From: Antechinus flavipes
Taxonomy: Eukaryota
Length of the DNA: 64,000 nt
Assembly (NCBI RefSeq): GCF_016432865.1
Contig: NC_067400.1
Coordinates: 624,402,001 to 624,466,000, forward strand
Reading direction: 5' to 3'
Position numbers and translations under genes: made by a program. The notes under the pieces are model-generated. The model was not told the origin of the DNA, searched no databases, and saw only the letters and a program-made list of their open reading frames with translations. This document shows positions 571-56,180 of the stretch, in pieces (positions within the stretch are counted from its first letter, which is position 1; the number at the start of each line of letters is the position of its first letter).

Positions 571-782
571 GCTCCCGGCCCCTTCCACCTCCACGGGCTC
601 CCGGCCCCTTCCACCTCCACGGGCTCCCGGCCCCTTCCACCTCCTCGGGCTCCCGGGCCCTTCCACCTCCTCGGGCTCCCGGGCTCTTCCACCTCCTCGG
701 GCTCCCGGGCCCTTCCACCTCCTCGGGCTCCCGGCCCCTTCCACCTCCTCGGGCTCCCGGGCCCTTCCACCTCCTCGGGCTC
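571..782. repeat. 26-bp GC-rich minisatellite, 8 full copies
   Basis: Unit GCTCCCGG(G/C)CCCTTCCACCTCC(T/A)CGG starts at 571, 597, 623, 649, 675, 701, 727, 753, with a partial copy at 779. Confidence 0.95.
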
Positions 783-4760: not shown

Positions 4761-5614
4761 AACTGGGACAATCTTTAAACTCCCCTGCGTTTGTAAGGGT
4801 CTCAGTGGAGGAGCAGCTCTGACCGTGGGTGGGCCAGGCCAGTGGGAGCTGGGCAGATCCTAGCCCCGATGGAACATCCTGAGGTTCATGGGGCGGAGGA
4901 ATCAAAGACTGGTGCTGAAAGCCCTCACAGCTTCCATCCTTCAATTTAAGGGGCAGGGGCGGCTGCCTGCTTTGGTCCACTAGGACCATGAGCCCTACCA
5001 GTGGGTCATATCCCCATAACCTTCAGAGCTGAGGAAGGGTGACAGAGGCTCAGGCTGTGTCTCTGGGTCCCCGACTTCTCAGGGCTTCCGCTTATCTTTG
5101 CGTCTCCCCGAAGGCCATCTTTGGAACTTTCCCCAATATTTTTGGGGGGTTGATTCCAATATTCCCTAGACACGCCCATCTCTTTCTCTGTTTATATATA
5201 TGAATAGACATATTTCTACACTCTGTCTTTCTGCCCCTCCGCTGCTCCGGGTCTCTCGCGAGGTCCGACGGCTGGTGCACCGCTCTCTCCGGGTCTCCCT
5301 GCCCCTGCCTCCGGGCCGCCTCTCTCCTGCCCTTCCCCCTTCCCCCTAAGCTCTTTTTCACTCTCACTCCGTACTGGCCCCAGGTGGCTTTTTCTCTCCC
5401 TGGCTCCCTAATGCTCTCCCTCCCCCACCCATCCTTTACCTGGACTCTTTCTGAACTTCCCTCCCGCTTCCGTTCACCCTCCCCCCACCCCCAGCCCCGG
5501 CTCCCATTGGCCAGGTCCAGGCTCCGGCAGGTTCTGTCAGTCTCCTGAGCGACGGGACGGCATCAACAGGGGGGGAGGGGGGGAGGAGGAGGGGGGCCAG
5601 AAGGAGGCCGGGCC

Positions 5615-7169
5615 ATGGCGGGCCTCGCGCGGGTTTCACACAGCGGCCTCTTGGGCACCCCGGTGGAGAGTCCTGGAGGTCGGAGGCCAGCCCGCTCAGA
5701 CAGGCGACAGCTCAGCATCCCGCTCCCCTTTCCGCCGCCTAAAGGGCAGGTGAGCGGCCGCCGGCTCCCGGGGATGAGGGCCCTAACTAAGAGGGAAAGT
5801 AGGACCCCTCCCCCAAGGGGCGGGACTGGGGAGAAAAAGACCTGGAGGCCCGAGGCGCAGGGCTGCGGAGGGAGGGCGCCGGGGGTCTTTCACCCTGCCG
5901 AAATCCTCCCCCCTCCTCGTGCCCCAGCCCTCGGTCCGCGAAAGCCTTCCCCCAGAGGCCACGTGTGACTCCCTTCTCCTGGACCTCGACGAGGACTTCA
6001 GTCGCTGGGAGACGTCCTCAGGTGCGGCGCACGGCCCCAAGTCTCACGGCGGGATGTACGCGCAGCCCGACCACCGGCTCTCCTCTAGGATCAGAAAGAC
6101 GCTGGGGATCAAGGAATTGGGAGAGAAGGTCAGGAGCGGGGGATTCGGGGGAGGAGGGCGGGCAGGGGAAGGGGCGAGAGGCCTGCGAGGACTGGGGGGG
6201 GAGCGGGCAGGGGAGAGGGCCAGAGATCGGAGGGGAGGGGCGGACAGGGGAGAGTGCCAGAGGCCGGAGGAGATTGGGGGAGGGGGCGGGCAGGGGAGGG
6301 GCCGACGACTCCAGCTTCCCCCTCTGTGCTCAGCTTCAGCTCCGGCCCCGGCGGTACCCCTTGAGCATGGCGTACCAGAAAAGCGAGATGCGGGAGAAGT
6401 ACCCGGGCTGGCCCAACCTGGGCACCGAGACCAGTCCAGGGCCAGAGTTTTGGGACCGAGCCAGCCAGGTGAGGCCGGGCTGGGGGAGGGGGAGGGGGCA
6501 GCGGGGTGATGGTGCCCAGGACACCCCGAGCGCTCCCCTTCCCTCTAGGCCCTCAGCTCCTCCAGCAAGGACCCGGCCCTGTCCGAAAAGCCCTTCTTCG
6601 AGCCCTATCTGACCACAACCTCCCGGGACTTCCGCTACTACCCGAAGTGAGCAGTGGCCGCGGCCCCTCGGGGCGCCCCCTTCGGGGCATCGCTCCAGCC
6701 CCTCCTCAAGCTCCCAGGAGCCCCTGTCCGGGGGATTCAGGAACCCCTGACCCTCGGCAGACCCCTCCGGGGCGCGCTGGGGAAGGCTGGGCGGGAAGTC
6801 CTGCGGGGCTCGGGCGTCCTCGGCCCCCTCCCCCCCGCCCTGCGGCGTCCTGACCCGGACTCATCCTCGAGCAGGAAGGAGCTGAGTTTCCCGCCCTGGA
6901 GTTTCCGCAGCCAGCCTCCGTCGGGGGCGCTCCAGCCGAAGCGGCCCCTCCCCCAGGAGCCCTGCGCCGACCAGCCCGTGGCGCGCGTCCCCCATCGCGG
7001 GGCCTTGTCGCTGATGCGAGAGTCCTACGGGCCCTTCCAGCAGTCGCTGCCCCGGGCTGAGAGCTCCCGCCCGGGGGAGGCCCGGCCACGCCCGTCCCTG
7101 CCCAGCCTGCAGGCCCTCTACCGGACCGAAAGCTCCCGTTACGGCAGCCTCAAGCCCGACTTCGTCTGA
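5615..7169 (+). CDS. SAXO3: Stabilizer of axonemal microtubules 3-like, 5 exons, about 287 aa
   Basis: Exons 5615-5749, 5928-6128, 6334(or 6340)-6468, 6549-6646, 6875-7169 are all GT-AG and in frame (864 nt). Motifs IPLPFPPPKGQ, DEDFSRWETSSG..PKSHGG, YLTTTSRDFRYY, VPHRGALSL.RESY and YRTESSRYGSLKP match my recollection of human SAXO3, which lies immediately upstream of LHB. Confidence 0.8.
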
Positions 7170-17754: not shown

Positions 17755-18182
17755 GGAGGGCTCCCCGCTCCAAAACCCACGGCCCCTCACCGGGCCTTCT
17801 AGAGCCTTCCTCCCCAGGGAGTCCTGGGCTGTTGCTTTGGAGGATCCCCTAGACCTCCCACCTTGTGGCCAGTCTGCTCTAAGCCCCAGGAGGTCCCCGG
17901 GACCCCGGTGTTCTAGAGAGCGGCCCGACTGGCTTAGCCCACCCCGTGGTACCCTCTGCGCCCCATGGGACCTGGCACCCTCTCCTGGTGGCCGCCCTGG
18001 CTTGGGGCAGCTCCACCCACATGCACTCCCACCCCTCTGCCAGTGCCTCCCCTGCCTGGCCCCACCCCCCGATTGCCCTCTGGCTCCCCCTGCCGGTGGG
18101 CAGGGGCTGCTGCGGCATTCACCGTGGGGTCAGTGGCCGCTTCTCCCTCCAGGAGTGAAAGAAGGCTTATGTATATTTAAAG

Positions 18183-27870: not shown

Positions 27871-30097
27871 TATAAAGTTAATTGCCTTCCCAAGGAGGCT
27901 GGGAGAGAGAATTTGGAACTCAAAACGTTTAAAAATGAATGTTTACAATTGTTTTTACAGTAACTGGAAAAATAAAATATTAAAAACAACAACAGCCTTA
28001 CCGAAGGAACAAAAGGGAGATAGTCTAAACTTTGGGGGGAGGGGCGCGGCAGTGGCAGCTGGGAGGATCAGCAAAGGCTGGAGAAAAGAGGCAGCAGCTG
28101 AAAAAAAAGCGGAGCTGGGAAGGAAACCAGGGGTTCTTGAGGGGGGGAGGGAGGAAGGCTGACTGTGTCCTCCTGGGAAAGGATGATCCAGGCTTCCAGC
28201 GGCCCGGGCTTGGGATCTCCTTGAAGGAAGGGCTTCTTTTCTGCCTTTCTTTGCCTCCCAGGTTCTTAGCACAGGGCCTGGCATTCAGTAGGCGTTTAAT
28301 CAGTGTTTATTACGAGAGGAAAGTGAGGCAGCTGATCCTGCCTTGTGGCCGGCTCTCCAGGCTGGAAAGCGTTTTCCTGATTGGAAAGACCGAATCCAAG
28401 CTCCCCGTGGACGGGGGAGGGGGGAGTCAGTTGGGAGGGGTCTTGGTCAGCAGCAATCCAGTCCTTCCCTCACCCTGACGCTATTTTACAGGAAGGCCAA
28501 CTGAGGCCTGGAGGCCAGCTCCCGAGCTCGCAGCTACACCGAGTCTCTCCCCAGTGACTGCAGAGAACGAGCAGAAGCCCCCAAAGCCCCGCGCCCGGGT
28601 TTGCGGTGAGGCAGGGGCAGAATCCAGCCCTGCCCCTCTCCCCTGCTGCCCCCCCCAAGGAAAGGCAGGGAGCGCTCTGGAGGGGGAGGGGAGGACGCAG
28701 AGTCAGCCGGGCAGAGATGGAAGCCGCGCCGTGGCCAAAGGCTCCGTTGGAATGCTGGGCCTTTGTCTTGTCGGAGGGGGGTGGGGAGAGCTCTGGCAGA
28801 TTGGGGAGGGGGCAGCCGGGGGGGGAGGGGGGAGAGGAAGGGGGGCTGGAAGACAGAGTCTTACAGAAATGAACACTGAAAAAATCCTCAGCCTTTTTCC
28901 TTTGTTGCTTATTTAAGCGACCCGCCATTTATTCTGAATTGATCTTTTTCAATCAACAACAATCCACCTTCTCTCCCTTCCACCTCCCCCCCCACCCCGA
29001 AAAAGAAAGAAAAACAGCAAAACCTCAGACAGAAAGGTGGGGGAGGGGAAGAGAGGGAGGGAGGGGGGAAGAAAGGGAGGGCGGGGCAGGAGGGAGGAAC
29101 TTGAGGGGAAGAAAGACCTTCAGGGGGAGAGACAGAAACAGAAAGTGAGGGGAGGAAAGGAGAAAGTAGGGAGCAGGAGGCCCTCCCACTGAGGCCTTCA
29201 GGCCCGGCCCTGGGCGGGAGCGGCTGCCCCTTGCTCCCTGCTCGGCTGCCCGAGCCGCCCTGGGGGCCCCCTGCGCCCTGGTTCAGCCCTCGGACCCCAG
29301 CTGCTGGCCGAAGCCGCCTCTCCTCTAGAACTCTAGGCTCCTCAGCCCGGCTCTTGCCTTCGGGCCCAGAGTGAAGGGCCCACCCTGGGCTGTGTGAGAG
29401 CTAAAGGGGAGGGGCCGTGGTGTTGGGGCCCCTCTGGCTGGGCCCGGGGCGGTCCGGACCTTCACCTTGGGCACTGGGGACCCGCGGGGGAGCCCACCTG
29501 GCTCGGTCCTGTCCGGAGGGGCGTCAGCGGGAGTGCTCCAGCCACAGACAGACAGACAGCAACAAGGGGGCCCACGCAGGGGCGCAGAAGACGGGACCCC
29601 CGCGATTGCCCCAGAGCGGGGGGGGGGGGTCATAGGGCGTTCCCCCTCAGCTCTGATAGGGAGGGGCCGTTCCTCCTTCAGCTTGGAATGAGGGAGAGGG
29701 GCGCCCTTATCTCCAGATGTGGGGTAAGGGAAGAGCGCCCAACGTGCCCGTCTCGGGCCTTCTACCCATGGCTCTGTGCCAGTGACCCACCACAGCTTGG
29801 GGGGGCGGGGTCAGCAAGCCAGAAAGGAAGTTCCCACAGCAAATTAAAACTGCCACAAGTCAGAACGACAAGACGAGCTCCAAAGAGCAAAATCTCCCAG
29901 GACGACATTGCCGCTGCGCCCTTGTTACAAACGGGCTCAAGCCCCCCGGGGGCCACGTTGACTGGAGGGTCTCTGGAGAACTCGGAGCCGCTGGCTTCCA
30001 ATCCCCTCGGCAGGGGCCCCTGGAGCCGGGGCCATCGTGGGCCGCGGTCCCAGGGAGCTGTCGTCCTTCCTGAAAGGCTGTGCTGCTGCTGCTGCTG

Positions 30098-30270
30098 CCC
30101 TCCGAGCCCTCCTCCCCGCTCACCCTCCTCCCCGCTCGCCCTCTGAGCCCTCCTCCCCGCTTGCCCTCCGAGCCCTCTCCCCGCTCGCCCTCCTCCCCGC
30201 TCACCCTCCTCCCCGCTCACCCTCCTCCCCGCTCGCCCTCTGAGCCCTCCTCCCCGCCCGCCCTCTCCCG
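30098..30270. repeat. C-rich minisatellite built from CCCTCCTCCCCGCT(CA/CG) and CCCTCCGAG/CCCTCTGAG modules
   Basis: Direct reading; the G-rich minus strand has many GGG runs. Confidence 0.85.
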
Positions 30271-30876
30271 TATCCCCTCAGGGACATCTCAGACTCCCAG
30301 AGGGGCAGGTTCCCAAGCCCACAGCTAACCACGGATCCTCCCTAACTCCCTCCACCCGCAAAGCTTGTGATGAGCAGGGGAACTGCAGGCCCTGGAAAAC
30401 GCCCCAGGGAACCGGAGTCAGGGGAGTATCGAGAGGCTGTGACCAACTGGGGACCAACAACTACCGCTGGGCGGGGGAACCCAAGAGCCAGAGCCCCTGG
30501 GAGCCCAGACCCCGAACCCCAGGAAGCATGAAGATGCGCCCGGGGGCTCCTCCTCAGCAGCCGCAGCTAGGAAAGACCCAGACGCTTCTCCCACCGGTCC
30601 CTGACACTCAGTGATCCCACCTCTGAAACGGGAGGATTTATAAGTGAGCCGAGATTCAAGAAGAGGCTTGGCCCCGGTGTCCTATGGACCATGGGACCAA
30701 TCTGTCTGCCACGCACAGAGGCACCTTGAGGTGCCGTCCCCTCTGTCTGGGGGTGAGCATCTTAAGGGCCGGAAATGCTTCGCTTACTGCTAAATGAATC
30801 AACAGGAAATGCTACAGGCTTAAAAACAGGAAATACAGAGCTTAGCACAGGGCCTCTCCCAGTAACGAATGCTCGG

Positions 30877-31247
30877 CCATCCATCNNNNNNNNNNNNNNN
30901 NNNNNNNNNNNNNNNNNNNNNNNNNNNNNNNNNNNNNNNNNNNNNNNNNNNNNNNNNNNNNNNNNNNNNNNNNNNNNNNNNNNNNNNNNNNNNNNNNNNN
31001 NNNNNNNNNNNNNNNNNNNNNNNNNNNNNNNNNNNNNNNNNNNNNNNNNNNNNNNNNNNNNNNNNNNNNNNNNNNNNNNNNNNNNNNNNNNNNNNNNNNN
31101 NNNNNNNNNNNNNNNNNNNNNNNNNNNNNNNNNNNNNNNNNNNNNNNNCCATCCTTCCATCCCTTCATCCCTCCATCCCTCCATCCCTTCATCCCTCCAT
31201 CCCTCTATCCCTCCTTCCATCTCTCCATCCCTCCATCTGTCCATCCA
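30877..31247. repeat. (CCAT/CCCT)n tetranucleotide-type repeat spanning an N-gap (30886-31148)
   Basis: CCATCCATC before the gap and CCATCCTTCCATCCCTTCATCCCT.. after it. Confidence 0.85.
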
Positions 31248-34200
31248 TTCGCAGGGAGGGGCTGTTCACCCCTGCCAGGGCCAGGGGACATCAAGCTGGG
31301 GGATGGTTTGTCAAATGCTCGTCACAAGGGACTTCCAGGACTCACAAGAGTTCTGGGGCAGCTGAGCAGGGCATGGGAGGCCGGGCCTGAATCGGGCCCC
31401 ATCGTCCCGAGTCCAAATCTGAGCCCGGACGCTTCCCGGCGGGGTGACCCTGACCGCATTCCCTAACCCTCCTGGCCTCTGCTCCCTTCTCTCTGACATG
31501 AGCTGGAGAAGGAAATGACAAACCAGTCCCATATCTGTGCCGTGAATCCCCAGGGGGGCGTGAAGAGCTGGACGGGCCTGAAAAACGACTGACCCACCCG
31601 AGTGGCCTTTGGGGAGTCGCCGTCCCTGACCGCATTTTGCTCCAAATTAGCCACTTCTCTGTGTATCCGCTTCCCGGGCCCGAAGGCTGATCCCCTCCCC
31701 GCTGTCCCCAAGGGGAGGAAGGCTGGCCCGCCCAGGCCCGTGTGGGCTTCCGCGAGTCCGGCAGGAGCGGGCGTGCAAGCAGGGCGCGGGCTTGGCTTAT
31801 AGCGTGGCGAGGGTCCTGTCCCCGGGTACAGACCAGGAGGACGTTTCTTTGGTTCACCTAAGGAGTGAACAACGCGAACTTGGTATAAATCGAATGGAAC
31901 CGAACTGAAGCGACCCGCTGAGTGCCGGCGTGTGCCACGCTCCGAGGGCCGGTGGTCGGCAGCAGCCACCCAGGAGCCCAAAGAGAAGTCGGGCTTTGCC
32001 CTTCTCCCTGCCCTGCTTCTTGCCTTCCCTTTGGCCCCCATCCTGGCTGACCGTCCGCGCGTCCCTCAGCGTCACGGGCCAGAACCAGGGGCTAAGTCAG
32101 GTCAGCTAGCCTGGTATCTGACGGTCCCTGGTTCAGTCCATGCACTAGCACTTACCAGAGCCCACAAGGTTCACACCTTTCGGAACCTCAGCCAGGACTG
32201 CGTCCGGGAGAGTCAGAAGCCAGAGAAGTAGGCGGGAGCTCTCGGAACCAAGGGGAGAGGGGGCCCCGAGTGACGGAGATGGGACTCGGAAGGAGACACT
32301 AAAGGATTCGGACTTTAACCCCTGGCTGCCCTTGGGCTGATTCCCGAGCTGAAAGGAAGGCTGCTCCCCGAGACCCCCAGGAAACAGAAACAGGGAACGT
32401 CACATTTTGGAGAGAACATCACACCCGTTTCATGATGTCAGAGGTCGGTGGGTCCGCGGCAACACCGGGCTACGTTTCCTTCTAAATAGAGTTTGTCCTT
32501 TTTATGTTTCGAGTGACAGTATCCCAAAGAGCCCGTCTGTCCTTTCTGGCCCCACAATTAGGGAGATTCCAAAGAAAAACAACGGCGGGGGGCTTCGCTG
32601 TCCCCCCCCCCGCGGCATCTGGCGAAACCGGCCCCGCGTTAGCCGTGTCTGAGAACACATGGAAATCCCGACATTTCCGTGTGGCTGGGGACTGTGAAGG
32701 GGGACGACGGACGGGGGGCCTCTTCCCCGCGGAGGCGGCTAGCTCAGGCCGGCCCCAGGAGCTGGTGTCCAGAGTAGTGACCAGCAGCCGCTGCTACGGA
32801 CCCCGGCCTGTGCCCTCCCTTTGGACCGCCCCCTTCCCCCACGCGCGTCATCTCAGCCTCCTTCCCGGCTTCCCCGAGTCCCGCTAAACGTCCCCCTTCT
32901 CTGGGAAGTTTTTCCCGCGTCGTCCCTCCATGGCTTATTATTTCGAACACACCTCGCGGTTGGCACAGCCCGTGCTCCTCGGGAGCCCCGGCGTGATGGG
33001 GGAGATGCCTGCACAAACGCCACGGAGTGAGGGGCGTTAAGGGGGTTCCCCTAAAGCGGGGGATTGGAGCAGGCTCTTAGGCGAGGAAGGGAGACTCTCC
33101 CCTTGAGAAGCAGCCAGGGAGGGAGAATGGAGGCGGGAGACAGGAAGTCTCGTTCAAGAAACAGCCGAGAGCTAGAGACCCTGGGGGGGGGGGGGGGAAG
33201 GAGGGGGGATTATGAAAAATTTGTGTTCCATCCGGGAGAGGGCCCTGAGGGAGGGGGCCGTCCGGCCGCTTTAGAAAGATTGCTTGGAAACGAGACCGGG
33301 CTGACAGACGCTCCTTAGCCCGTCCCCCAAGCAGGAGGCTGCTGGCGGCTGGGGGGAGAAGCGGGCCTGGGCATGGGGGGTGGGGGCAGCCTGTCGGCTG
33401 CGAGCCTCGGGGGCCGCTCCAGAGCACCAGGGCGGAGGGGAGTCTGGGGGAAAACACGGAGTTTGTTCCGGGACACGCTGGGGTTAAGATTTCCCTGGAC
33501 ATCCAGGACACACTGAGGCCGGGGGTCAGGAGAAAGGTCAGCACCGGATCGGGAGCTCACTTCCAGTAAGATGGGGGAGCAGGGGAGAGGAGCCCTGAGG
33601 GGGGCCGGGATGAAGATCCAGCAAAGGGGCGGGGGGGGGACCAGAAGGCCCACGGACGAGAGAGCAGCGAGGGAGAGGGGAACAGAGGCTGCCCGGGGCG
33701 CAAGGGCCAAGGCTGGAGAAGAGGCCCCAGGGTGGGCCGGGGGGAGCTCGCTGGTCGCCTTAGAGCGGGGGCGAGGAGCCCCAGGCCCACGGGCCTACGA
33801 CCCGGCTCCCTCAGCTTCGCCCTCCACGCTGGCCACTGGGGTGGCCCTCGGGCCCGGCTTTAGGAAGGGCAGTTTGGGCTGAAGGGGAAGCCGGAGAAAA
33901 GGAAGTGGAGGCAGAGGCTTCCCCACAGGGACGGGGAGACACGGGCAAAATGGGGGGGGGGCAGGAGGGAGAAGGACGGACCGGGTGGGAGAGTGGGGGG
34001 TGCTGGGTCTGCCTCGGGAGGCTCTGTCTTTCCGAGTTCAGAAAGGGCAGGAGCCGCACAGGCGGGGTGTCCCTGCCGAACACACGAGCGGACACAGGCA
34101 GCCCCGGCCTGGGCGCAGGCGCAGAACTCTGACAGCTTCCACAGCGCCCCCCGCTCCCGCTTCCCAGAGCCACCCTCGGTGCCAGTCTCGCCGCCCCCTT

Positions 34201-34742
34201 TGCCAGCCTGAGGGGTCTGAGGCCGAACACGGAGAGTCGCCTTCCTCAGTATTGCAGGTTATTCCTTGTTTAGAGCCCGGATTTCTTTTTGAAAACTCTG
34301 TCCCGTTCCCGCCCGGCTCTGGTTCTCCAGTCTGTCCCGCAGAGGCTGCCGGCCCAGAGCCCCTCCCCCCGATGTCGGACTCCCCCCGGAGAGTTCTCCC
34401 CCCCCCTTCCTCTCCTTGCTCTGCGGGCGCCGACCCCCACCCAAAAGCTTCTCAACCTCAGGGACCGGGCGCTGATAATTCTGTCCCGTGATCCCCTGTC
34501 GTCTGTCAGACGTAAACATTTAACAACGGGCTCTCCAGGGGAAATAACAGCGATGTACAAAGCCCTTCAAGGCTTGATCTGCGGGTTTCCCTTCCCGCCA
34601 CCTGCGCCTGTCCCCAAACAATCGTAGCACCGGGCTGTCCTTCGTGGGAAACAGGCCCGGAGGGGAGCCCCAGACCCCCTCCCCGCGCTTCTTCCTGGGA
34701 CTCTGGGGAGAGACGCACCCACACCTCTGCAGCGGGAGTCTC

Positions 34743-34748
34743 TTTATT
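34743..34748 (-). terminator. DHDH: DHDH polyadenylation signal
   Basis: TTTATT on +, about 160 nt past the stop codon. Confidence 0.75.
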
Positions 34749-34910
34749 CCGAAACACCTGGGGGGGGGGAGGGGGCGGGCCCGGGCTCCTGGCAAGTGAC
34801 CCCAATTCCCCTGAGGGCTCAGCCCGGGGGAAGCTAGGGCTGGCGTTCTGGACCTCCACCACCGGGGGGCGCCTTGAGCGGCAAGCTGAAGAGGATGCAG
34901 GGGGTGACCG

Positions 34911-37420
34911 CTAACTGGCCAGTGGCTTGGAAGCTCGGGCTCCGTCCTGGGGGAACTGGAGCCCGATCTGCCTCCTGCTCTCCTCCAGGATGTCCGCCAG
35001 CAGCTCGCTCTCGGCCAGGGGCATTAGCGGGCTCTCCTTCAGGCCTAGGGAATGGACCAGGGTCAGCAGCGCGCACTGGAGGCGGGGGTGGGGACCCGCG
35101 GAGGCCCCTCCCCCCTCCCGGGCTCACCCTGCAGCAGACACTGCCGCACGTGCCGGGCCTCGAAGACCATGCCCATGGAATTGAGGAAGTTTAACTTCTC
35201 CGTGGCCGGAACCGCGGGCAGCGGGAACTCGGTGCGCTTCCCGTTCACGACCAGCTCCGTGGGGCACCACATGTGGGCCGGGATCTGGGAGGAGAGAGGG
35301 CACAGGGCAGGGGGCTGACCCCGCCCGTCCCCGGTCCCGGGCGGCCCCTCAAGCCCAGGCTCCCCTCACCTGGGCCGTGCCCTTGGTTCCGAACACCGTG
35401 AGCGAGTTGGACAGTTCGGTGGAGATGCTGCAGCTGAAGCTGGCCTGCAGCCCGCCCGGGTACCGGAGGGTGACTGTCACCGTGTCATCCACGCCTGGCG
35501 GGGGACACGGGAGGGTCAGGGAGGGCTCGCGGGCAGCCCCCCCCCAGCCCCGGGAGCCCAGCCCGGGGCCAGCACTGCCCCCCTACCCTTCTCGTGGAGC
35601 AGCCCCACGGCGTGGATCTCTCAGGCCGCCGACCCCCGCCCACCATGGAGATGAACTGGACGCAGTAGATGCCCAGGTCCAGCAGCCCGCCCCCGGCCTG
35701 GGCCCAGTCGGTGGCGCGCGGGAAATCGCTGCAATCCCAACCGAAGTGCGCGTGGACCAGCCGCACCTCCCCGAGGGTGCCCTGGGACAGCAGAGCCCGC
35801 AGCGCCTCGGTGGCGGGAAAAAACCGGGTCCAGATGGCCTGGAGGGGAGGGGGGAAGGGCACAGCGCGCTGGGCCCCGGAGGGAAGCGCCCCTCCGCATT
35901 CCGGATGCGAACTGGACGCTGACGCCCACACTCCAAATCCTTTGAGGGCTCAGCCCCAGGGGAAGCTAGGGCTGGCGTTCTGGGCCTCTACCACCAGGGG
36001 GCGCGCGCAGGCAAGGCACTGAGGTGGCTGGGGCTGGTATTCTGGGCTTCTACCACCAGGGGGCGAGTGCAAGCTACGGACTGGGGTGGCGTCCTGGATC
36101 TCCACCACCTGGGGGCGCGCGCAGGCCAGGGTCTGGGGTGGCTGGGGCTGGCGTTCTGGACCTCCACCACCTGGGGGCGCGCGCAGGCCAGGGACTGGGG
36201 TGGCTGGGGCTGGCGTTCTGGACCTCCACCACCTGGGGGCGCGCACAGGCCAGGGACTGGGGTGGCTGGGGCTGGTGTTCTGGACCTCCACCACCTGGTG
36301 GCGCGCACAGGCCAGGGACTGGGGTGGCTGGGGCTGGCGTTCTGGGCCTCCACCACCTGGGGGCGGGCACAGGCCAGGGACTGGGGTGGCTGGGGCTGGT
36401 TTTCTGGGCTTCTACCACCGGGGGCCCCGCGCAGGCCAGGGTCTGGGATGGCTGGGGCTGGTATTCTGGACCTCTACCACCAGGGGGCGCGCGCAGGCGA
36501 GGCACTGGGGTGGCGTTCTGGATCTCCACCACCGGGGGGCGCACGCAGGCCAGGCGCAGACTTCACTCTCACCTCCATCAGGAAAAGGCCACGGGCCCTC
36601 GCGGCTGCCACCATCTCGCGGACTTCGGTGGCCGTGACCCCGAGAGGCTTTTCGCACAGCACCGGCTTTCCCGCCTCTAGGCCCAGCAGCACAGCGCGCA
36701 GGTGCTGCGGATGCTGAGCGCCGACGTACACTAAGTCTATGGCGGTGCTTCCGCAGAGGCCCCGCCCCCAGATGCCTTTTCTCAGCAGCTCCGGCACCTC
36801 TCCTCTGTGGAAGCCCCGCCCCTGGGCAGCCCGTCTGTCTAGGCCCCGCCCCATAGCCCGCCCCTCCCGCAGCTTTCCCTTGCGTAGTCCCCAAACATCC
36901 CTCGGGCCCGGCCTCACCCACGTCCGGGTCCCGCACCAGCTCCTCATAGGAGCCGTAGCTCTTGGGGATCTCGTGCCTTTTGGCGAAGTCCTGAGCCCGG
37001 TCGAGGTCCCTGGCGGCCACGGCCACGATCTGTGACCAGAGACCCCTTTCAAACGGCGCCCGGACCCAGCCACGCTCCCTCGGGGTCCCTCCCCCCCAGC
37101 CCCGTGTGCTCTCGGCGACCCCCGAGCCCCTCCCCGCTTCACCCTTGGCCTTCCGGGACTCGGGCGCTAGCCACGCCCCCTCGGGGTCTCTGTCGCAGGC
37201 GATCGCAGCGCCCCTTCCCCAGCTCCGCGTCTGGCACCAAAGGGACCCAGGAGGCCGGGCCCCGACCGCCCCCCCCCCCAGTCCTCCCCGGGCATCTTCC
37301 TCGCCTCCCCCGGGGCTGCGGGACCTGATGCTCGGACCGCGGCAGGCTCCTCAGGGCAGTGGCGAAGTCGTGCGAGATGAGGCCGGCGGCCAGGAGCCCC
37401 CAGCGCAGAACTCCGCCCAT
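34911..37420 (-). CDS. DHDH: Trans-1,2-dihydrobenzene-1,2-diol dehydrogenase (dimeric dihydrodiol dehydrogenase), 7 exons; exon 4 has a 1-nt deletion in this sequence
   Basis: Exons 37325-37420, 36918-37029, 36573-36736, 35587-35838, 35370-35494, 35128-35284, 34911-35044 sum to 1040 nt, one short of in-frame. Motifs [42 protein letters not shown]. Confidence 0.92.
35950..36560 (+). repeat. 62-bp minisatellite (10 units, two shortened to 52 bp), each with a CTCF-core-like motif, filling DHDH intron 3
   Basis: Cores CCACC(A/T/G)GG(G/T)GGCG start at 35991, 36053, 36105, 36167, 36229, 36291, 36353, 36477 and 36529; the unit at 36415 is degenerate. Confidence 0.95.
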
Positions 37421-39040
37421 CTCTGCAGCAGCCCCGGCGCGCTGAACCTCTGCTCCTCTGCTCCCCAGCGCTCCCTTTTCTAGGCCTCTGCTCATTGGCA
37501 GACTCCGGAAGGCAGGCCCCGCCCCCGCCCCCCAGCTGGAGGTCAGCCCCTGTACCTGCTCCTGGCCCAAGGACAGCCCCGAACTCCGGGCCAGACGGAG
37601 GGTGCACGCGGCTCGGAGGCAGGGCCCCCTCCAGCTCCCCCTTTCCCGCTTCACCTCTGATCTCGCCCAACCCTCCAATAAAGGGCGCAGGACTAAAGGG
37701 CTGCTTGATTCCCTGAGGCTCGGGTTTCAGCCTCTCTGCCCGTCTCTTTCCTGGCTCGGCTCTAGCTGCCCCACTGCGGAAATGACCTTGGGGGCTCCTC
37801 CCACTCTGGGCCACCTCTCCAAGGGGTAGAAGTAGGGCAGGCCCCCTCCCACCGTGCCCAACCTCCTGGCCGGGCAAAAAGGGGGCCCTGGCCTCTTCCC
37901 CCCCTCCCCAACCTGCTGGGTTGGCCGGGATGCTGACCCCCCTTTCCTTTTCCTATGTGACCTTTCATCTCCAAGGTCCCATAATGTACAAACCGGGGTC
38001 CTGGGACTCCCTGGCTCTATGCTTACACCCGACTCAGCCGGCAGGGCCTCCTCCCCCCTCATCTCACCCCGGACCAATGCCATGCTCCTGCCTAGCACAC
38101 AGCAGGCGCTTCATGCTTACTGGACACGCAGAGGACGACCTTTGGAGCCCCCTTTTTGGGGAAAAGCCCTGGCCAGGCAACTTCTGGGAGTGTCGGCCCT
38201 GCCCCGTCTAAAGGTCTCTAGGAATGGGGCGCTCAGCACATGCCCAGATGCAGCCCCAAAGTTTTGCCATCAAAATTAAGCTGCCTTTTGCATCCTCCCC
38301 TCCCTGCTCCTTTCGGATCTGACCGAAGCTTCCAAGCCCTCATGCACTGGTCCGGCTTTCCGAGGCCTGGAAGTTCTCGTCCCCTCGGGCTGCTCGCCAG
38401 CAGGATTCTCGGGGCCTTCCCGGAGGCCCAGTTCAGGAAGCCTCCAGCACATTGAGCCAAGGCCCCAAGATGGCAGAAAGCCACACTTCCTCCTTCAGCC
38501 CATATAAGTCAGGGAGAGACCTTGAGGGAAGCACGGGAACCCTGAACCCTCCTGCTCCTCGAGGCCCGGCCTTCCTTGACACAAGCTGTCCCCTCTGCTG
38601 GACTCCGGCAGGAACTGGCCAAAGGCCCAAGTCTAGAATGTGGGGAAGCCTCGAACCCATGTCCAGGCGCTCCCTTCTGACAGGGCCAAGCAGAGAGGGA
38701 CAGGGAGGTAGCCGGGCTGAGAGAGAGACAGAGGCAGAGAGAGAACGAGGTCTCTAGGAATGGGGCGCTCGGCACGGCCCCCGAAGCCCTTCCCACGCAG
38801 GGAGAGCTTTACGCAGCCCCAGGTCTTTGTCATCAGGACTAAGCTGCCTTTGCATCCCCCCCCACACACACACTGCTCACTGCCTCAGAGGTAGCCAGGC
38901 TCAGAGAGACAGAGATGGATGTGACTTGGGGGATGGGGGGAGAGAGGCCTGGGGGGAAGGGCCCCAGGCTGCCCCCAGCACCGCTGCCTCCTCCCAAGCT
39001 GTAGCACAGACACGCGTGTGGTCAGGGGGCCCAGAAAGTC

Positions 39041-39046
39041 TTTATT
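39041..39046 (-). terminator. NUCB1: NUCB1 polyadenylation signal
   Basis: TTTATT on +, only about 18 nt past the predicted stop codon, implying a very short 3' UTR if this signal is used. Confidence 0.65.
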
Positions 39047-39064
39047 GGGTGATCTTGGGGATCC

Positions 39065-42000
39065 CTAGTGCTGGGAATCGGGCACAGGGGAAGCCGGGCC
39101 CGGGGCTGGCGCCTCTTTCTTCACAGCTGGCTCTGCCTGGGCTCCCGTCTCTAGAAAGACAGAGAGAAAATAAGGTCCCGGATGCCCGGCCTCCCGGCCC
39201 CCCCCGCCCCCCTCCGGAGCTCAGAGCCCTGGCAGGCCACACAGGCCCGAAACCACAATTCCCACAAGGCCGTGGGGCAGGGCCACAGCGGGGCAGCGCC
39301 CCCACCACCCCAAACTCTTCCTCTCTCAGAACCAAGCCCGGGGTCAGGAGGCACCTGGGTGGGGCTGGAAAAGGAGCTGTCCGTCGGGGCCCGGAGCTGG
39401 GGGGTCCGGGGGCTGCTGCTGCTTCCTCTGCTCCATGTGAAGGACGGCCTGGGGGGTGCGAAGACGGGCGGCGGGGGGTGAGCGGACTGGGGCCCCGACA
39501 CCCTGTCCCCCCGCCCCCACCTCCCAGCCGGCCCCAGCCACCTGCTGCAGCTCCTTCTTCTGGGCTTCCAGCAGGCCCTGCGAGTGGTCCAGGGCCTTGC
39601 TCTCCTGGCTCAGCCGCTGGGCCTGGGCCGCCAGCTCGGCCTCCCGCGCCGCCAGTTCCGCCTCAAAGCGGCGCAGTTCCTCCTCCGTGTAAGCCGGGTG
39701 CTCCTCCAGAGTCTGGGGGGGGCGGAGTCAGGCAGAGCGGCCCTTCCTGCCCCCACGGGGGGATGGGGCCCACAGAGCAGGGGCACAAGGCAGCGGCCCG
39801 GGGGATGGTGGGGATTGGGGGGGCAGGGAGGGGACGGTATGGGGGGGAGGGGAGGGGGGCAGTCACCTCCCAGCCCTTCGGGGCGGCCTCTTCGAACTCC
39901 TTCCTCTGCGTGGCCAGGAGGAACTCCTCGAGGGTCACCAGGCGGTCCTGGTTTGTGTCCACCTACGGGACGAGGCTGGATGTGAGCTGCAGGGGGTCCC
40001 CCGGAGCCCTGGTCTCACTGGCTCCACCATGTGCTGGGGGAGCGGCACTGCAGGGGGCCCCTGTTGCCCCCTCCCCTTCCCCCTTCCAGTCTCACTGGCT
40101 CCACCATGTGCTCGGGGGAGGGGGCAGCACTACGGGGCCCGGGGCTCACCGTCTTCATGACGTGCTCCCGCATCCTCAGCCTTTCCTCCTCCATCTCCCT
40201 CATGTCATCGTCCTCGTTCTTGGGGTCGTACACCTTCTCCAGCTGCACGGGAGGGGGCAAGGACGGGGCTCAGGGGCTGCCGACCCCATCCCCCACCCCT
40301 GACCACGTGGCCGCTACGCGCTCGGGACCGGGCTGAGCCCTCAGCCCGAAGGCCTCACCTCCTTGGTAAAGAGAGCCTCCAGCTCCTGCTCGTCCAGGAC
40401 GCCGTCGCTGTTCGTGTCTGGGGAGGGCAGTCAGGGGGCCGAGGTCAGGGAGGCTGCCGGCCGGGCGCGGGGACGGAGAGGTGTGCGGGGGGGGGGCATG
40501 CTGGGGGACCAGGGGGGTGGGGGGGGCATGCTGGAGGACCACGGGGGGGCCCGGGGAGCCGGGGTGGGGGTGAGGGGGGCCGGGGGCCAGAGCCTTGCCA
40601 GGCCCGTCGTGGTGGGAGCCAGCCTCTCCCCGGCAGCCCAGGCCTGGGCCCCGTGGGGCCGATCCACCAGCCTGCAAGCCGTGGAGGCTCCTGGGGAGAC
40701 AGGCAGGGCCTCCGCCTCTGGGGCTGCCCCGTCCCACCAGGAACTCACCGTGTAGCCTGAAGAAGGTCTTAGGATTGAACTCGGTGGGATCCAGCCCGTC
40801 CGTCTCTTCCCACACCTCCTTCAGCTGGGCCTGGCTGCCCTGGGGGGAGGGGAAGAGCAAGGGCTGGGGACTCACAGGCCCGGGAGGACCCCCTCCCGGG
40901 ACCGCGGGCAGCAGGCCCTGCCCCGGGGCCAGCCCTCACCGGCACGTTGAGCCGAGGATGCTGCCGGTGTCTCTGCTTCTGCTCCTCCAGCCTCCGCTCC
41001 TCCGCCAGCCTCTGCTCCTCCCCCAGGGAGTCCAGGTAACGGCGCCGCTCGTGCTCCTTCAGCATCTCGTAGCGCTTGAACTCCTCGTGGTGGGCCGCGT
41101 CGTACTGCGCCAGGTCCCGGGTGGCCTGGGGACGCGACTCAGGAGGTCAGGGGTCCCCGGCCCTGGGCTTCGTGGCCGACTTAGGCGTGGGGTCCGGCCC
41201 TCTCCCACCCAGGATCCAGCTCCAGGGCCCGGAGCGCGTAGCGGCCGGGGAGGGAAGGCCGGCTGGGCTCGCTCCCGAGGTTTTAGAGATGGAGATGCGC
41301 CCCAGGGAGGCCGGGAGGCCCCGAGATGAGCCTCACCGTCTGGATCAGCAGCTCCAGGTCTCGGGCTTCAAACGTGTGCTGGTTCTGAGGGTCCAGGTGT
41401 TCAAACTGCTTGAGAAGGCTCAAGTGGTCGACCTGCACCTCTGGGGTCCGGGAGAGAGGCACATACTTGGTCCGAGCCACAGGGGGCCTCCCCGCGGCCC
41501 CTCCTCCCTCCCTCGGGGGCCCAGGTCTCACCAGGCTCCTGGGCAGCATCCATCTTGGCCTTGAGCAGCATCCGCAGGCGGGACACCTCCTGCCGCTTGA
41601 GCTCGTCCAGTTTGGTGCGAATGTGATGACTGACAAAGTCGAGTTCCCGACTCAGTTTCCCACTCTGGGGTGGGGGAGACACAGAGGGGCGCAGTCACCA
41701 CAACGGGGAGCCGGTGAGCGCCCGGGGGGACGGGACAGCAGGAGAAAGCCCCCCCCCGCCCCGGGCACCGGCCCCCACCTTGATGTCCTCCGCGTTGGCG
41801 GCCTGCAGCTTCTCTCGGAAATGCCCGTCGGTCTCCAGGACCTGGATCACCTCTTGGAGGTAGCGGTGGTAGTAGAGCCCTGTGTCCTGGGAAGACAGGC
41901 CGGATCCCTCGAACCCAAGGCTGACCGGGCCCTGCTGGGCTCCGGGGCCTTCGGAGGACGCCCTCAGGCTCAAGCACAGCTGCTCCGCTCAGCTGCCGAG

Positions 42001-54740: not shown

Positions 54741-54879
54741 CCCGGTGTCCTGGACATCAGTCAGTGTCACTCATTGAACCTGGTCACTTTGAAGCCTGGG
54801 CCACCTCTAGATCCTTGGATTGCCCAAGGAAAAGGGCAACAACTAAAATCTCTTCTGTGGGTTTACTGGGATGAGAAGG

Positions 54880-55490
54880 ATCCCATGGACCTTAGCCCCA
54901 AACCACAAGGCCGTGAATCCCATGGACTTTGGCCTCAAACCACAAGGCCGTGGATCTCATAGACCTTAGCCCCAAACCACAAGGCCGTGGATCCTGTGGA
55001 CCTTAGCCCCAAACTACAAGGCCATGGATTTCATAGACCTTAGACCAAAACCACAAGGCTGTGGATCCTGTGGAGTTTGCCATGTTAGCCTAAAACCACA
55101 AGGCCATAGATCCCGTGGACCTTAGCCCCAAACCACAAGGCTGTGGATCCCGTGGAGTTTGTCATATTAGCCTAAAACCATGAGGCCATGGATCCCATGG
55201 ACCTTAGACCAAAATCACAAGGTCATGTATCCCGTGGACCTTTGCCCCAAACCACAAGACTGTGGATCCCGTGGACCTTAGCCCCAAAGCACAAGGCCAT
55301 GGATCCTGTGGACCTTAGACCAAAATCACAAGGTCATGGATCCCGTGGACCTTTGCCCCAAACCACAAGACCGTGGCTCCCATGGACCTTAGACCAAAAC
55401 CACAAGGCCGTGGCTCCCATGGACCTTAGACCAAAACCATAAAGTCGTGGATCCCATGGACTTTAGCCCCAAAGCACAAGGCCGTGGCCC
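54880..55490. repeat. 37-bp minisatellite, about 16 units (two 45-bp variants)
   Basis: Unit approximately AAACCACAAGGCCGTGGATCCCGTGGACCTTAGCCCC; starts at about 54900, 54937, 54974, 55011, 55048, 55093, 55130, 55175, 55212 and onward to 55471. Confidence 0.95.
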
Positions 55491-56104
55491 AGAGGCCAGA
55501 AGCAGCCAGGACACTAATCTCTGGGCCAACCATCCCTCATGTCTCCCAAAGCCACCAAATGCCTTTTTGGGGCAGCTCTCCCAGCAGCCGCTCTACCCTT
55601 TTCTGCCCAAACCCGCTAAGGCGGCCTGGTCTTGACTGATACCATCATCTCCTCCTTCCAAGCTAGAAGCACCACGGGGGAAGATCTTCTCACTGTGATT
55701 CTCCCTGGAGAGGCGCTTGTCGCCAGGTGGCGCTGCAGGGGATGCAGGGGTGAGCGCCAATTCCCTCGGCCACTGGTGTCAGGGAAGGACAGGAAGGGGG
55801 CAGCTCCCATCTGGGCACGGGGCAAGCAGGCTTCCAAGGGCTGGTGGCAGCATCCGTAGAATCCCATGGACTGAGATGATACAGGAGAGTTGGATCAGGG
55901 CGGATGAAAGATGCTCCGGAGTTAGAGACTGAAGGGACAAAGGCAAATGATTCCAACAAGGAGAGGAAGTGGGATTTGTCTGAAGAGACTGACGTGGATG
56001 CACAGGGAACTCACCCACAAACTGGTTTTTTGTAACCTAGCATTCCATTTTCCCTAATTATATGTAAAAATTTATTTTAATATTCAGGGGGAGGGGCAAG
56101 GTCC

Positions 56105-56180
56105 AAATGTCAAGCATCTGACTCAGGTTCTCCTGACTTCAGATGCAGTGCTCTATTCACTGTGCCAACTAGCTGCCCCT
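56105..56180 (-). mobile_element. tRNA-derived marsupial SINE head fragment
   Basis: Minus strand GGGGCAGCTAGTTGGCACAGTGAATAGAGCACTGCATCTGAAGTCAGGAG. Confidence 0.7.

What the first reader, a model, noticed from the sequence alone, without database searches (positions are those of the whole stretch)
35950..36560. Tandem array of about 10 co-oriented CTCF motifs built as a 62-bp minisatellite in DHDH intron 3
Seen: cores CCACCAGGGGGCGC (35991, 36477), CCACCAGGGGGCGA (36053), CCACCTGGGGGCGC (36105, 36167, 36229), CCACCTGGTGGCGC (36291), CCACCTGGGGGCGG (36353) and CCACCGGGGGGCGC (36529). Only the unit at 36415 is degenerate. Variation between copies falls largely at positions the CTCF consensus tolerates (A/T at core position 6, G/T at position 9). 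Each full unit has CTGG(C/T)(G/A)TTCT about 6 nt upstream, loosely resembling the ZF9-11 upstream motif. Spacings are 62 or 52 bp, close to 6 or 5 helical turns, so the sites would face roughly the same side of the helix. The last site is 30 nt from the exon 3 donor. Established: clustered CTCF sites in tandem repeats (H19 ICR, DXZ4, Firre) act as methylation-sensitive insulators or loop anchors, and the GCGC CpG makes these methylation-sensitive in principle. Inference: a lineage-specific, copy-number-variable insulator or splicing-coupled pause element beside BAX/FTL/LHB. I know of no description of it.
Basis: partly seen in the sequence, partly recalled or inferred. Interest (0 to 1): 0.8.

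Follow-up and report, generated by a model that had tools for sequence, protein, structure and literature searches.

The report
Dasyurid intron minisatellite carrying CTCF-like motifs
A real 62-bp tandem repeat fills most of intron 3 of the DHDH gene in this carnivorous marsupial and repeats one older CTCF-like site about ten times, but its sequence evolves like an ordinary young minisatellite, so it is a plausible but unproven CTCF-binding cluster of an already known kind.

Summary
TRF finds a 62-bp array at 35965-36555 (9 copies plus a 52-bp variant, 85% matches).

Unit shuffles reach these scores in 0.05-1.1% of trials.

The functional reading is weaker:
- The most variable column is matrix position 9 (A in 93% of CTCF sites). 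Only 3 units keep A; 5 carry T.
- Across 28 units from three dasyurids, the motif footprint varies as much as the rest of the unit.
- Unit consensus sequences diverge about as fast as the unique intron flank.
- The core CpG lies at position 12, reported as methylation-insensitive in vitro.

Koala has one unit (17 bits) and Dromiciops has none. Sminthopsis has 3 units, Sarcophilus 6 and this genome 10. A copy in the 3'UTR became a 7-unit array in Sarcophilus only.

Best reading: a lineage-specific minisatellite that multiplied one pre-existing CTCF-like site, probably neutrally. CTCF occupancy is untested. The scan has flagged at least four other CTCF-motif arrays on other DNA of this genome.

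The parts
35965..36555 (+). Minisatellite of 10 units (eight spacings of 62 or 52 bp plus a terminal unit). It is G-rich on the + strand and fills 80% of intron 3.
   Evidence: TRF; unit alignment; GC 72%, GC skew +0.19, CpG o/e 0.43
35988..36006 (+). Unit 1 CTCF-like 19-mer, A-type, 20.0 bits
36050..36068 (+). Unit 2 CTCF-like 19-mer, A-type, 15.9 bits (52-bp unit)
36102..36368 (+). Units 3-7, the recently homogenised central block. It holds T-type cores (CCACCTGG...) of 13.5-14.1 bits at 36102, 36164, 36226, 36288 and 36350.
36412..36430 (+). Unit 8, degenerate core (CCACCGGGGGCCCC), below 9 bits
36474..36492 (+). Unit 9 CTCF-like 19-mer, A-type, 20.0 bits
36526..36544 (+). Unit 10, G-type core, 15.6 bits. 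It is nearest the exon 3 donor and matches the single koala site except for one base.
35839..36572 (-). DHDH intron 3 (734 nt), with GT donor at 36572-36571 and AG acceptor at 35840-35839
36573..36740 (-). DHDH exon 3
   Evidence: tblastn, 96% identity to Sarcophilus DHDH
35585..35838 (-). DHDH exon 4, with a 1-nt deletion near 35619 relative to other dasyurids
34800..34875 (+). Single paralogous copy of the array's left flank plus one unit, in the DHDH 3'UTR. It has a G-type core of 15.5 bits at 34856-34874.
   Evidence: 92% identity over 62 nt; alignment; exact 23-mer shared; stop codon at 34911-34913 and AATAAA at 34743-34748

Best explanation
This is a young minisatellite specific to the dasyurid family. 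A 52-62-bp piece of DHDH intron 3, lying next to the exon 3 donor, already held one CTCF-like site as a single copy; koala still has it in that state. In the dasyurid lineage this piece was duplicated head to tail, presumably by replication slippage or unequal exchange (inferred). It now stands at 3 copies in Sminthopsis, 6 in Sarcophilus and 10 in this genome.

The same piece was also copied once into the 3'UTR. That copy expanded independently into a 7-unit array in Sarcophilus, which points to a sequence that expands readily rather than to selection at one place.

Each unit inherits the CTCF-like core, so the ten co-oriented motifs are one ancestral site multiplied, not ten sites assembled by selection. 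The units evolve as neutral, germline-methylated DNA would. The three A-type units and the G-type unit are good enough matches that CTCF could bind them where the DNA is accessible. I put that at roughly 40-50% for some tissue. No sequence evidence shows that such binding is maintained by selection or has a function.
For: - Array and coordinates.
- Copy number by species: intron 3 is about 200 nt with no motif in Dromiciops, has one unit in koala (17.0 bits), is about 300 nt with 3 units in Sminthopsis, is 495 nt with 6 units in Sarcophilus, and is 734 nt with 10 units here.
- 3'UTR copy: single here and in Sminthopsis, a 53-bp x 6.7 array in Sarcophilus, identical in two devil assemblies.
- No motif-biased conservation. 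Within this array the variant rate is 0.080 in the footprint and 0.074 elsewhere. Across 28 units it is 0.090 against 0.099 (p = 0.53).
- The most variable column is matrix position 9, with states A, T, G and a gap.
- Unit consensus identity between species is 92/88/84%, counted by eye from the consensus rows. Unique intron flank identity is 87/87/83%.
- The recently homogenised central block carries the weaker T variant.
- The CpG at matrix positions 8-9 (CCACCG) appears as CA in the A-type units and as TG in the 3' copies, and the array's CpG o/e is 0.43 against 0.56-0.63 nearby. This is a methyl-CpG decay signature.
- Per unit, 0.05-1.1% of shuffles reach the observed score. Scan notes list at least four more CTCF-motif arrays among 626 windows of this genome, so many such arrays may arise by chance genome-wide (rough, inferred).
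Against: - The motif match is well above composition for a single locus (p = 0.0005-0.011).
- The high-information positions CCA, G10, G13 and C15 are invariant or nearly so in all 28 units.
- A CTCF-like site sits at the same place, about 30 nt from the exon 3 donor, in koala and in the dasyurids. These are separate marsupial orders, so the single ancestral site may be conserved.
- The G-to-A change that made the strongest motif is shared by all three dasyurids.
- The conservation tests have low power: the units are short, evolve in concert, and come from only three species.
Confidence: 0.68

Rival explanations
1. Functional CTCF cluster. The co-oriented sites are occupied by CTCF and cohesin and act as an insulator or loop anchor between NUCB1 and the DHDH/BAX/FTL side, with strength tuned by copy number.
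For: - Nine of ten units pass p < 1e-5 under a uniform background, and three reach about 1e-7 to 2e-6.
- All sites have the same orientation.
- The upstream block sits at a permitted spacing with 6/10 identity to CAGCTGTTCC.
- An ancestral site is shared with koala.
- Tandem-repeat CTCF clusters are known, for example DXZ4 (PMC3491370) and the HRNR VNTR conjecture (PMC10234305).
Against: - There is no motif-biased conservation.
- The expanded subfamily here carries T at a near-invariant A.
- Two of the six Sarcophilus units have a 1-nt deletion that breaks the motif.
- The paralogous 3'UTR copy expanded in only one lineage.
- CpG decay suggests germline methylation.
- No strong convergent partner site lies at higher coordinates in the window.
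Confidence: 0.12
2. Splicing-coupled pause element. CTCF bound just downstream of exon 3 slows RNA polymerase II and favours recognition of exon 3, and the array strengthens this effect.
For: - The last site lies 30 nt from the donor.
- The single koala site is at the same place.
- A precedent for CTCF-promoted pausing and exon inclusion is known from general knowledge; no paper was checked here.
Against: - Exon 3 is a constitutive coding exon with a good GTGAGA donor.
- Dromiciops lacks the site and still has the same exon structure.
- The 3'UTR copy and its expansion in Sarcophilus cannot serve this role.
Confidence: 0.04
3. Hotspot-driven minisatellite. The unit is expansion-prone because it lies in a GC-rich, high-recombination region or attracts breaks, and the CTCF resemblance is incidental or itself promotes breakage. 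This concerns the cause of expansion and is compatible with the best explanation.
For: - Two paralogous copies expanded independently in different lineages.
- The surrounding region is 60-73% GC and holds many other GC-rich arrays.
- The unit contains short internal repeats (CTGGGG x2-3), and the 52/62-bp variants differ by a 10-nt internal duplication.
Against: No recombination, break or population data exist for this genome. The koala and Dromiciops single copies stayed single.
Confidence: 0.12
4. Transposon-derived array. The unit descends from a CTCF-motif-bearing SINE such as the opossum MAR1_Mdo elements.
For: - Opossum MAR1_Mdo SINEs carry CTCF M1 motifs (PMC3368268).
- The flank GGCAAGTGACCCCAATTCC next to the 3'UTR copy looks like a MIR core (from memory only).
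- Another array in this genome was read as a SINE head (s1-208930).
Against: - The unit and both flanks align to single-copy intron 3 sequence in koala and Dromiciops.
- blastn finds no similarity to the MAR1-like head present in the window at 56156-56177.
- Only one other copy exists in 64 kb, and it is a local duplicate.
Confidence: 0.04

Closest known systems
GC-rich intronic minisatellites (VNTRs) of mammals
   Same: Head-to-tail units of tens of base pairs. GC-rich with strand asymmetry. Central units homogenised and edge units diverged. Copy number differs between related species. Length variants arise from internal short duplications.
   Different: Each unit happens to carry a high-scoring CTCF-type motif. 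Polymorphism within a species has not been shown: two Sarcophilus assemblies have equal unit counts.
Tandem-repeat CTCF clusters (DXZ4, Firre, H19 ICR, human gamma satellite; HRNR VNTR conjecture)
   Same: Repeated, co-oriented CTCF motif matches, one per repeat unit. Copy number sets the number of potential sites.
   Different: The units are far shorter (62 bp against hundreds to thousands of bp), and the array is inside a gene intron. No occupancy data exist. The methylation-sensitive core position 2 is not a CpG here. The motif is not conserved more than the rest of the unit.
Repeat-driven expansion of CTCF sites by SINEs (B2 in rodents, SINEC_Cf in dog, MAR1_Mdo in opossum; Schmidt et al. 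2012, PMC3368268)
   Same: Lineage-specific multiplication of one CTCF-like sequence in a marsupial genome.
   Different: Multiplication here is local tandem duplication of native intron sequence plus one nearby copy, not retrotransposition. No SINE origin was found.

Membership tests
Minisatellite / VNTR | Head-to-tail repeats with a unit of about 10-100 bp | tested here: met
   TRF finds period 62 x 9.0 copies at 85% matches, plus a 52-bp variant.
Minisatellite / VNTR | Copy number varies between individuals | tested here: inconclusive
   Copy number differs between species (1, 3, 6, 10). The two Sarcophilus assemblies have the same unit counts and differ only in poly-G length. No second assembly of this species was available.
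CTCF binding-site cluster / insulator | Match to the CTCF core motif | tested here: met
Exact p-values are 1e-7 to 8e-6 under a uniform background and 6e-7 to 3e-5 at 68% GC. Shuffles reach the score in 0.05-1.1% of trials.
CTCF binding-site cluster / insulator | CTCF (and cohesin) occupancy in vivo | not testable with these tools
   No dasyurid CTCF data turned up in the literature search. Opossum liver ChIP-seq exists (PMC3368268), but by gene span opossum has no room for the array (1734 nt).
CTCF binding-site cluster / insulator | Motif positions conserved more than neighbouring sequence | tested here: not met
   The variant rate is 0.090 in the footprint against 0.099 in the upstream 23 columns over 28 units (p = 0.53). 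Matrix position 9 is the most variable column. Unit consensus sequences diverge about as fast as the unique intron flank.
CTCF binding-site cluster / insulator | Methylation-sensitive CpG at core position 2 (as in the H19 ICR type) | tested here: not met
   Core position 2 is followed by A. The CpG is at position 12, where methylation has almost no effect in vitro (PMC8084297). G-type units add a CpG at core positions 5-6.
CTCF binding-site cluster / insulator | Upstream (ZF9-11) motif at the proper spacing | tested here: inconclusive
   CTGGCGTTCT matches CAGCTGTTCC at 6 of 10 positions, 6 nt before the 19-nt matrix, and a linker of 2-7 nt is allowed. A 6/10 match is expected by chance in roughly 2-3% of 10-mers per offset (my own calculation).
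SINE-borne CTCF sites (MAR1_Mdo type) | Unit derived from a SINE | tested here: not met
   Orthologous single-copy intron sequence exists in koala and Dromiciops. There is no similarity to the MAR1-like head in the window. No repeat library was available, so an old, eroded element cannot be excluded.

The most novel reading that the evidence does not exclude
The single CTCF-like site about 30 nt downstream of DHDH exon 3 is a functional site older than the dasyurid-diprotodont split. In dasyurids it has been multiplied at two places in the gene (intron 3 and the 3'UTR). CTCF/cohesin binding itself may make such sequences prone to tandem duplication, for example through breaks or fork stalling at bound sites. 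That could explain why the same unit expanded twice independently, and why CTCF-motif minisatellites keep turning up in this genome.
Probability: 0.07. Interest if true: 0.6.

Novelty: new member of a known kind. Interest (0 to 1): 0.3.

Why it matters
If CTCF does bind, the dasyurids offer a natural copy-number series of one site at one locus: 0, 1, 3, 6 and 10 copies. A second array exists in the devil's 3'UTR. Together these could show how the number of clustered CTCF sites affects boundary strength next to BAX and FTL.

As it stands, the locus mainly documents the birth and growth of a minisatellite from single-copy intron sequence. It also shows that a tandem array of motif matches is one event multiplied, not independent evidence of function.

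Tried and rejected
- **SINE origin.** I recalled the MAR1/MIR head and core. One MAR1-like head is in the window (56156-56177), but the unit shows no similarity to it, and the MIR tail and core probes found nothing useful. The koala and Dromiciops orthologues show native intron sequence instead.
- **G-quadruplex reading.** No canonical G4 (loops of 7 nt or less) occurs on either strand of the intron. G4s appear only with loops up to 12 nt.
- **Known RNA families.** Rfam finds none in 30000-42000.
- **Coding or retained-intron reading.** The intron is 734 nt (not a multiple of 3) and has stop codons in all three sense frames.
- **CpG-column enrichment of variants within this array.** The odds ratio is 2.1 and not significant (p = 0.12).
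- **More species.** Monodelphis, Gracilinanus, Macrotis, Trichosurus, Petaurus and Vombatus returned gene spans but no DNA because the files were too large.
- **Within-species polymorphism.** The two devil assemblies have equal unit counts.
- **Look-up of the unit among the scan's findings by sequence.** This returned nothing.

Full report
**What is there**

TRF reports a period-62 array at 35965-36514 (9.0 copies, 85% matches, score 729) and an overlapping period-52 row to 36555. The spacings are 62, 52, 62, 62, 62, 62, 62, 62, 52, and one further match lies outside the array at 34859. The 52-bp units lack a 10-nt internal duplication (GGCTGGGGCT) that the 62-bp units carry. The array is 72% GC, G-rich on the + strand (skew +0.19), with CpG o/e 0.43 against 0.56-0.63 in the neighbouring kilobases.

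**Gene context**

Ten marsupial DHDH proteins found by protein search map by tblastn to seven minus-strand exons between 37420 and about 34911.
- Exon 3 is 36740-36573, the donor GT is 36572-36571, and exon 4 starts at 35838.
- The array therefore lies in intron 3 (734 nt), fills 80% of it, and its last core ends 30 nt from the donor.
- NUCB1-like exons lie at 39.6-41 kb on the same strand, as in the fetched marsupial loci.
- The CTCF-like motifs are antisense to DHDH.

The exons are 91-97% identical in protein to Sarcophilus and 88-92% to Sminthopsis over exons 1-3. The genome is therefore a third dasyurid. A scan note names it Antechinus flavipes. I did not check that, but it fits.

**Motif strength**

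Its column sums of 908-913 look right, but it should be re-run with the real file.

| Units | Core type | Score (bits) |
|---|---|---|
| 1, 2, 9 | A at core position 6 | 20.0, 15.9, 20.0 |
| 10 | G | 15.6 |
| 3-7 | T | 13.5-14.1 |
| 8 | degenerate | below 9 |

Exact p-values run from 1e-7 to 8e-6 under a uniform background and from 6e-7 to 3e-5 at 68% GC. In 20,000 dinucleotide-preserving shuffles of the unit, 1.1% reach the consensus unit's 14.1 bits and 0.05% reach the A-type's 19.7 bits.

The resemblance is therefore better than composition for one locus. But the ten matches are one founder multiplied, so the effective sample is one. None of the window's other roughly 20 TRF arrays has a hit of 11 bits or more.

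- Core position 6 is matrix position 9, which is A in 851 of 912 sites (1.55 bits). It is not a tolerated A/T position.
- It is the most variable column of the whole unit. Its states are A x3, T x5 and G x2 here, and A, T, G or a gap across 28 dasyurid units, with 15 of 28 in the minority.
- The variant rate inside the 19-nt footprint equals the rest of the unit. It is 0.080 against 0.074 within this array, and 0.090 against 0.099 across species and paralogues (Mann-Whitney p = 0.53).
- The GCGC CpG is at core position 12, where methylation has almost no effect in vitro. The sensitive position 2 is not a CpG here (PMC8084297).
- The upstream block CTGGCGTTCT matches the published upstream consensus CAGCTGTTCC at 6 of 10 positions at an allowed spacing (PMC12885311). 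That is weak.

**Comparative history**

I fetched DHDH loci for Sarcophilus (two assemblies, L001 and L004), Sminthopsis (L002), Dromiciops (L003) and koala (L005).

| Species | Intron 3 | Units | Best motif scores (bits) |
|---|---|---|---|
| Dromiciops | about 200 nt | recognisable orthologous sequence, no CCACCACC and no motif | none |
| Koala | not measured | 1 | 17.0 (CCACCAGCGGGGGGCGCCG), next to the donor |
| Sminthopsis | about 300 nt | 3 | two at about 20 |
| Sarcophilus | 495 nt | 6, in a 123-bp higher-order pattern | three at 20.3, one at 12.8, two broken by a 1-nt deletion |
| This genome | 734 nt | 10 | see table above |

Gene spans of species without DNA leave little or no room for an array: Monodelphis 1734 nt and Gracilinanus 1865 nt.

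The G-type core of the koala site, of this array's donor-side unit and of all 3'UTR copies suggests that G is ancestral. The CCACCG CpG then gave CCACCA (A-type, the best CTCF match) and CCACTG (in the 3' copies). These are the two products of methyl-CpG deamination (inference). T is specific to this genome and marks the central, most recently homogenised units, so the latest expansion multiplied the weaker variant.

Unit consensus identity between species is 92, 88 and 84%, counted by eye from the consensus rows. That is close to the identity of the unique intron 3 flank, 87, 87 and 83%.

**A second copy**

About 75 nt comprising the array's left flank plus one unit recurs at 34800-34875, in the same orientation, at 92% identity over 62 nt. 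It lies in the 3'UTR, between the stop codon (34911-34913) and AATAAA (34743-34748).
- It is single here and in Sminthopsis.
- It is absent from koala (by eye) and Dromiciops.
- In Sarcophilus it has become a 53-bp x 6.7 array with cores of 11-18 bits, identical in both devil assemblies.

Two paralogous copies that expand independently in different lineages point to a sequence that duplicates readily, rather than to selection for a cluster at one position.

**Verdict**

The thing is a lineage-specific intronic minisatellite that multiplied one older CTCF-like site.
- CTCF binding to the stronger units is plausible. My estimate is 40-50% for some tissue.
- VNTRs and satellites carrying CTCF motifs are a described kind (PMC3491370; PMC10234305).
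- Marsupial lineage-specific expansion of CTCF motifs is known for SINEs (PMC3368268).
- The scan has flagged at least four other CTCF-motif arrays on other DNA of this same genome. With a 0.05-1.1% per-unit chance rate, that is roughly what one expects without function.

No dasyurid CTCF data were found in the literature held.

Noticed in passing
window 35610-35625 (minus strand, DHDH exon 4): There is a 1-nt deletion relative to Sarcophilus and Sminthopsis (gene sense GAGAAGA becomes GAGAGA, near 35619). It shifts the frame for the last 12 codons of exon 4 and everything downstream. This is either an assembly error in a short purine run or real inactivation of DHDH in this animal.
   Followed up: partly
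L001 5342-5695 and L004 about 5338-5691 (Sarcophilus DHDH 3'UTR): A 53-bp x 6.7 tandem array (93% matches) derives from the same unit as the intron 3 array. It is present in two devil assemblies and is a single copy in this genome and in Sminthopsis.
   Followed up: yes
L001 3891-4247 (Sarcophilus intron 3): The array has a higher-order 123-bp period of alternating 53-bp and 64-70-bp units. The long units carry poly-G runs of 9-13 nt whose length differs between the two devil assemblies.
   Followed up: partly
window 54878-55487: A 37-bp x 16 minisatellite (77% matches, GC 53%, CpG o/e 0.29) lies in the AT-richer right part of the window. A separate single CTCF-like match of 15.8 bits sits at 55717-55735.
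   Followed up: no
window 56100-56180 (minus strand): This is a fragment of a MAR1/MIR-like SINE head (GGCAGCTAGTTGGCACAGTGAA...), the family reported to carry CTCF motifs in opossum. This copy has lost the motif.
   Followed up: partly
window 571-782: A 26-bp x 8.2 C-rich minisatellite, very homogeneous (96% matches).
   Followed up: no
window 17973-18099 (minus strand): Two single CTCF-like matches (14.9 and 16.0 bits) lie about 100 bp apart, in the opposite orientation to the DHDH array.
   Followed up: no
   Followed up: no
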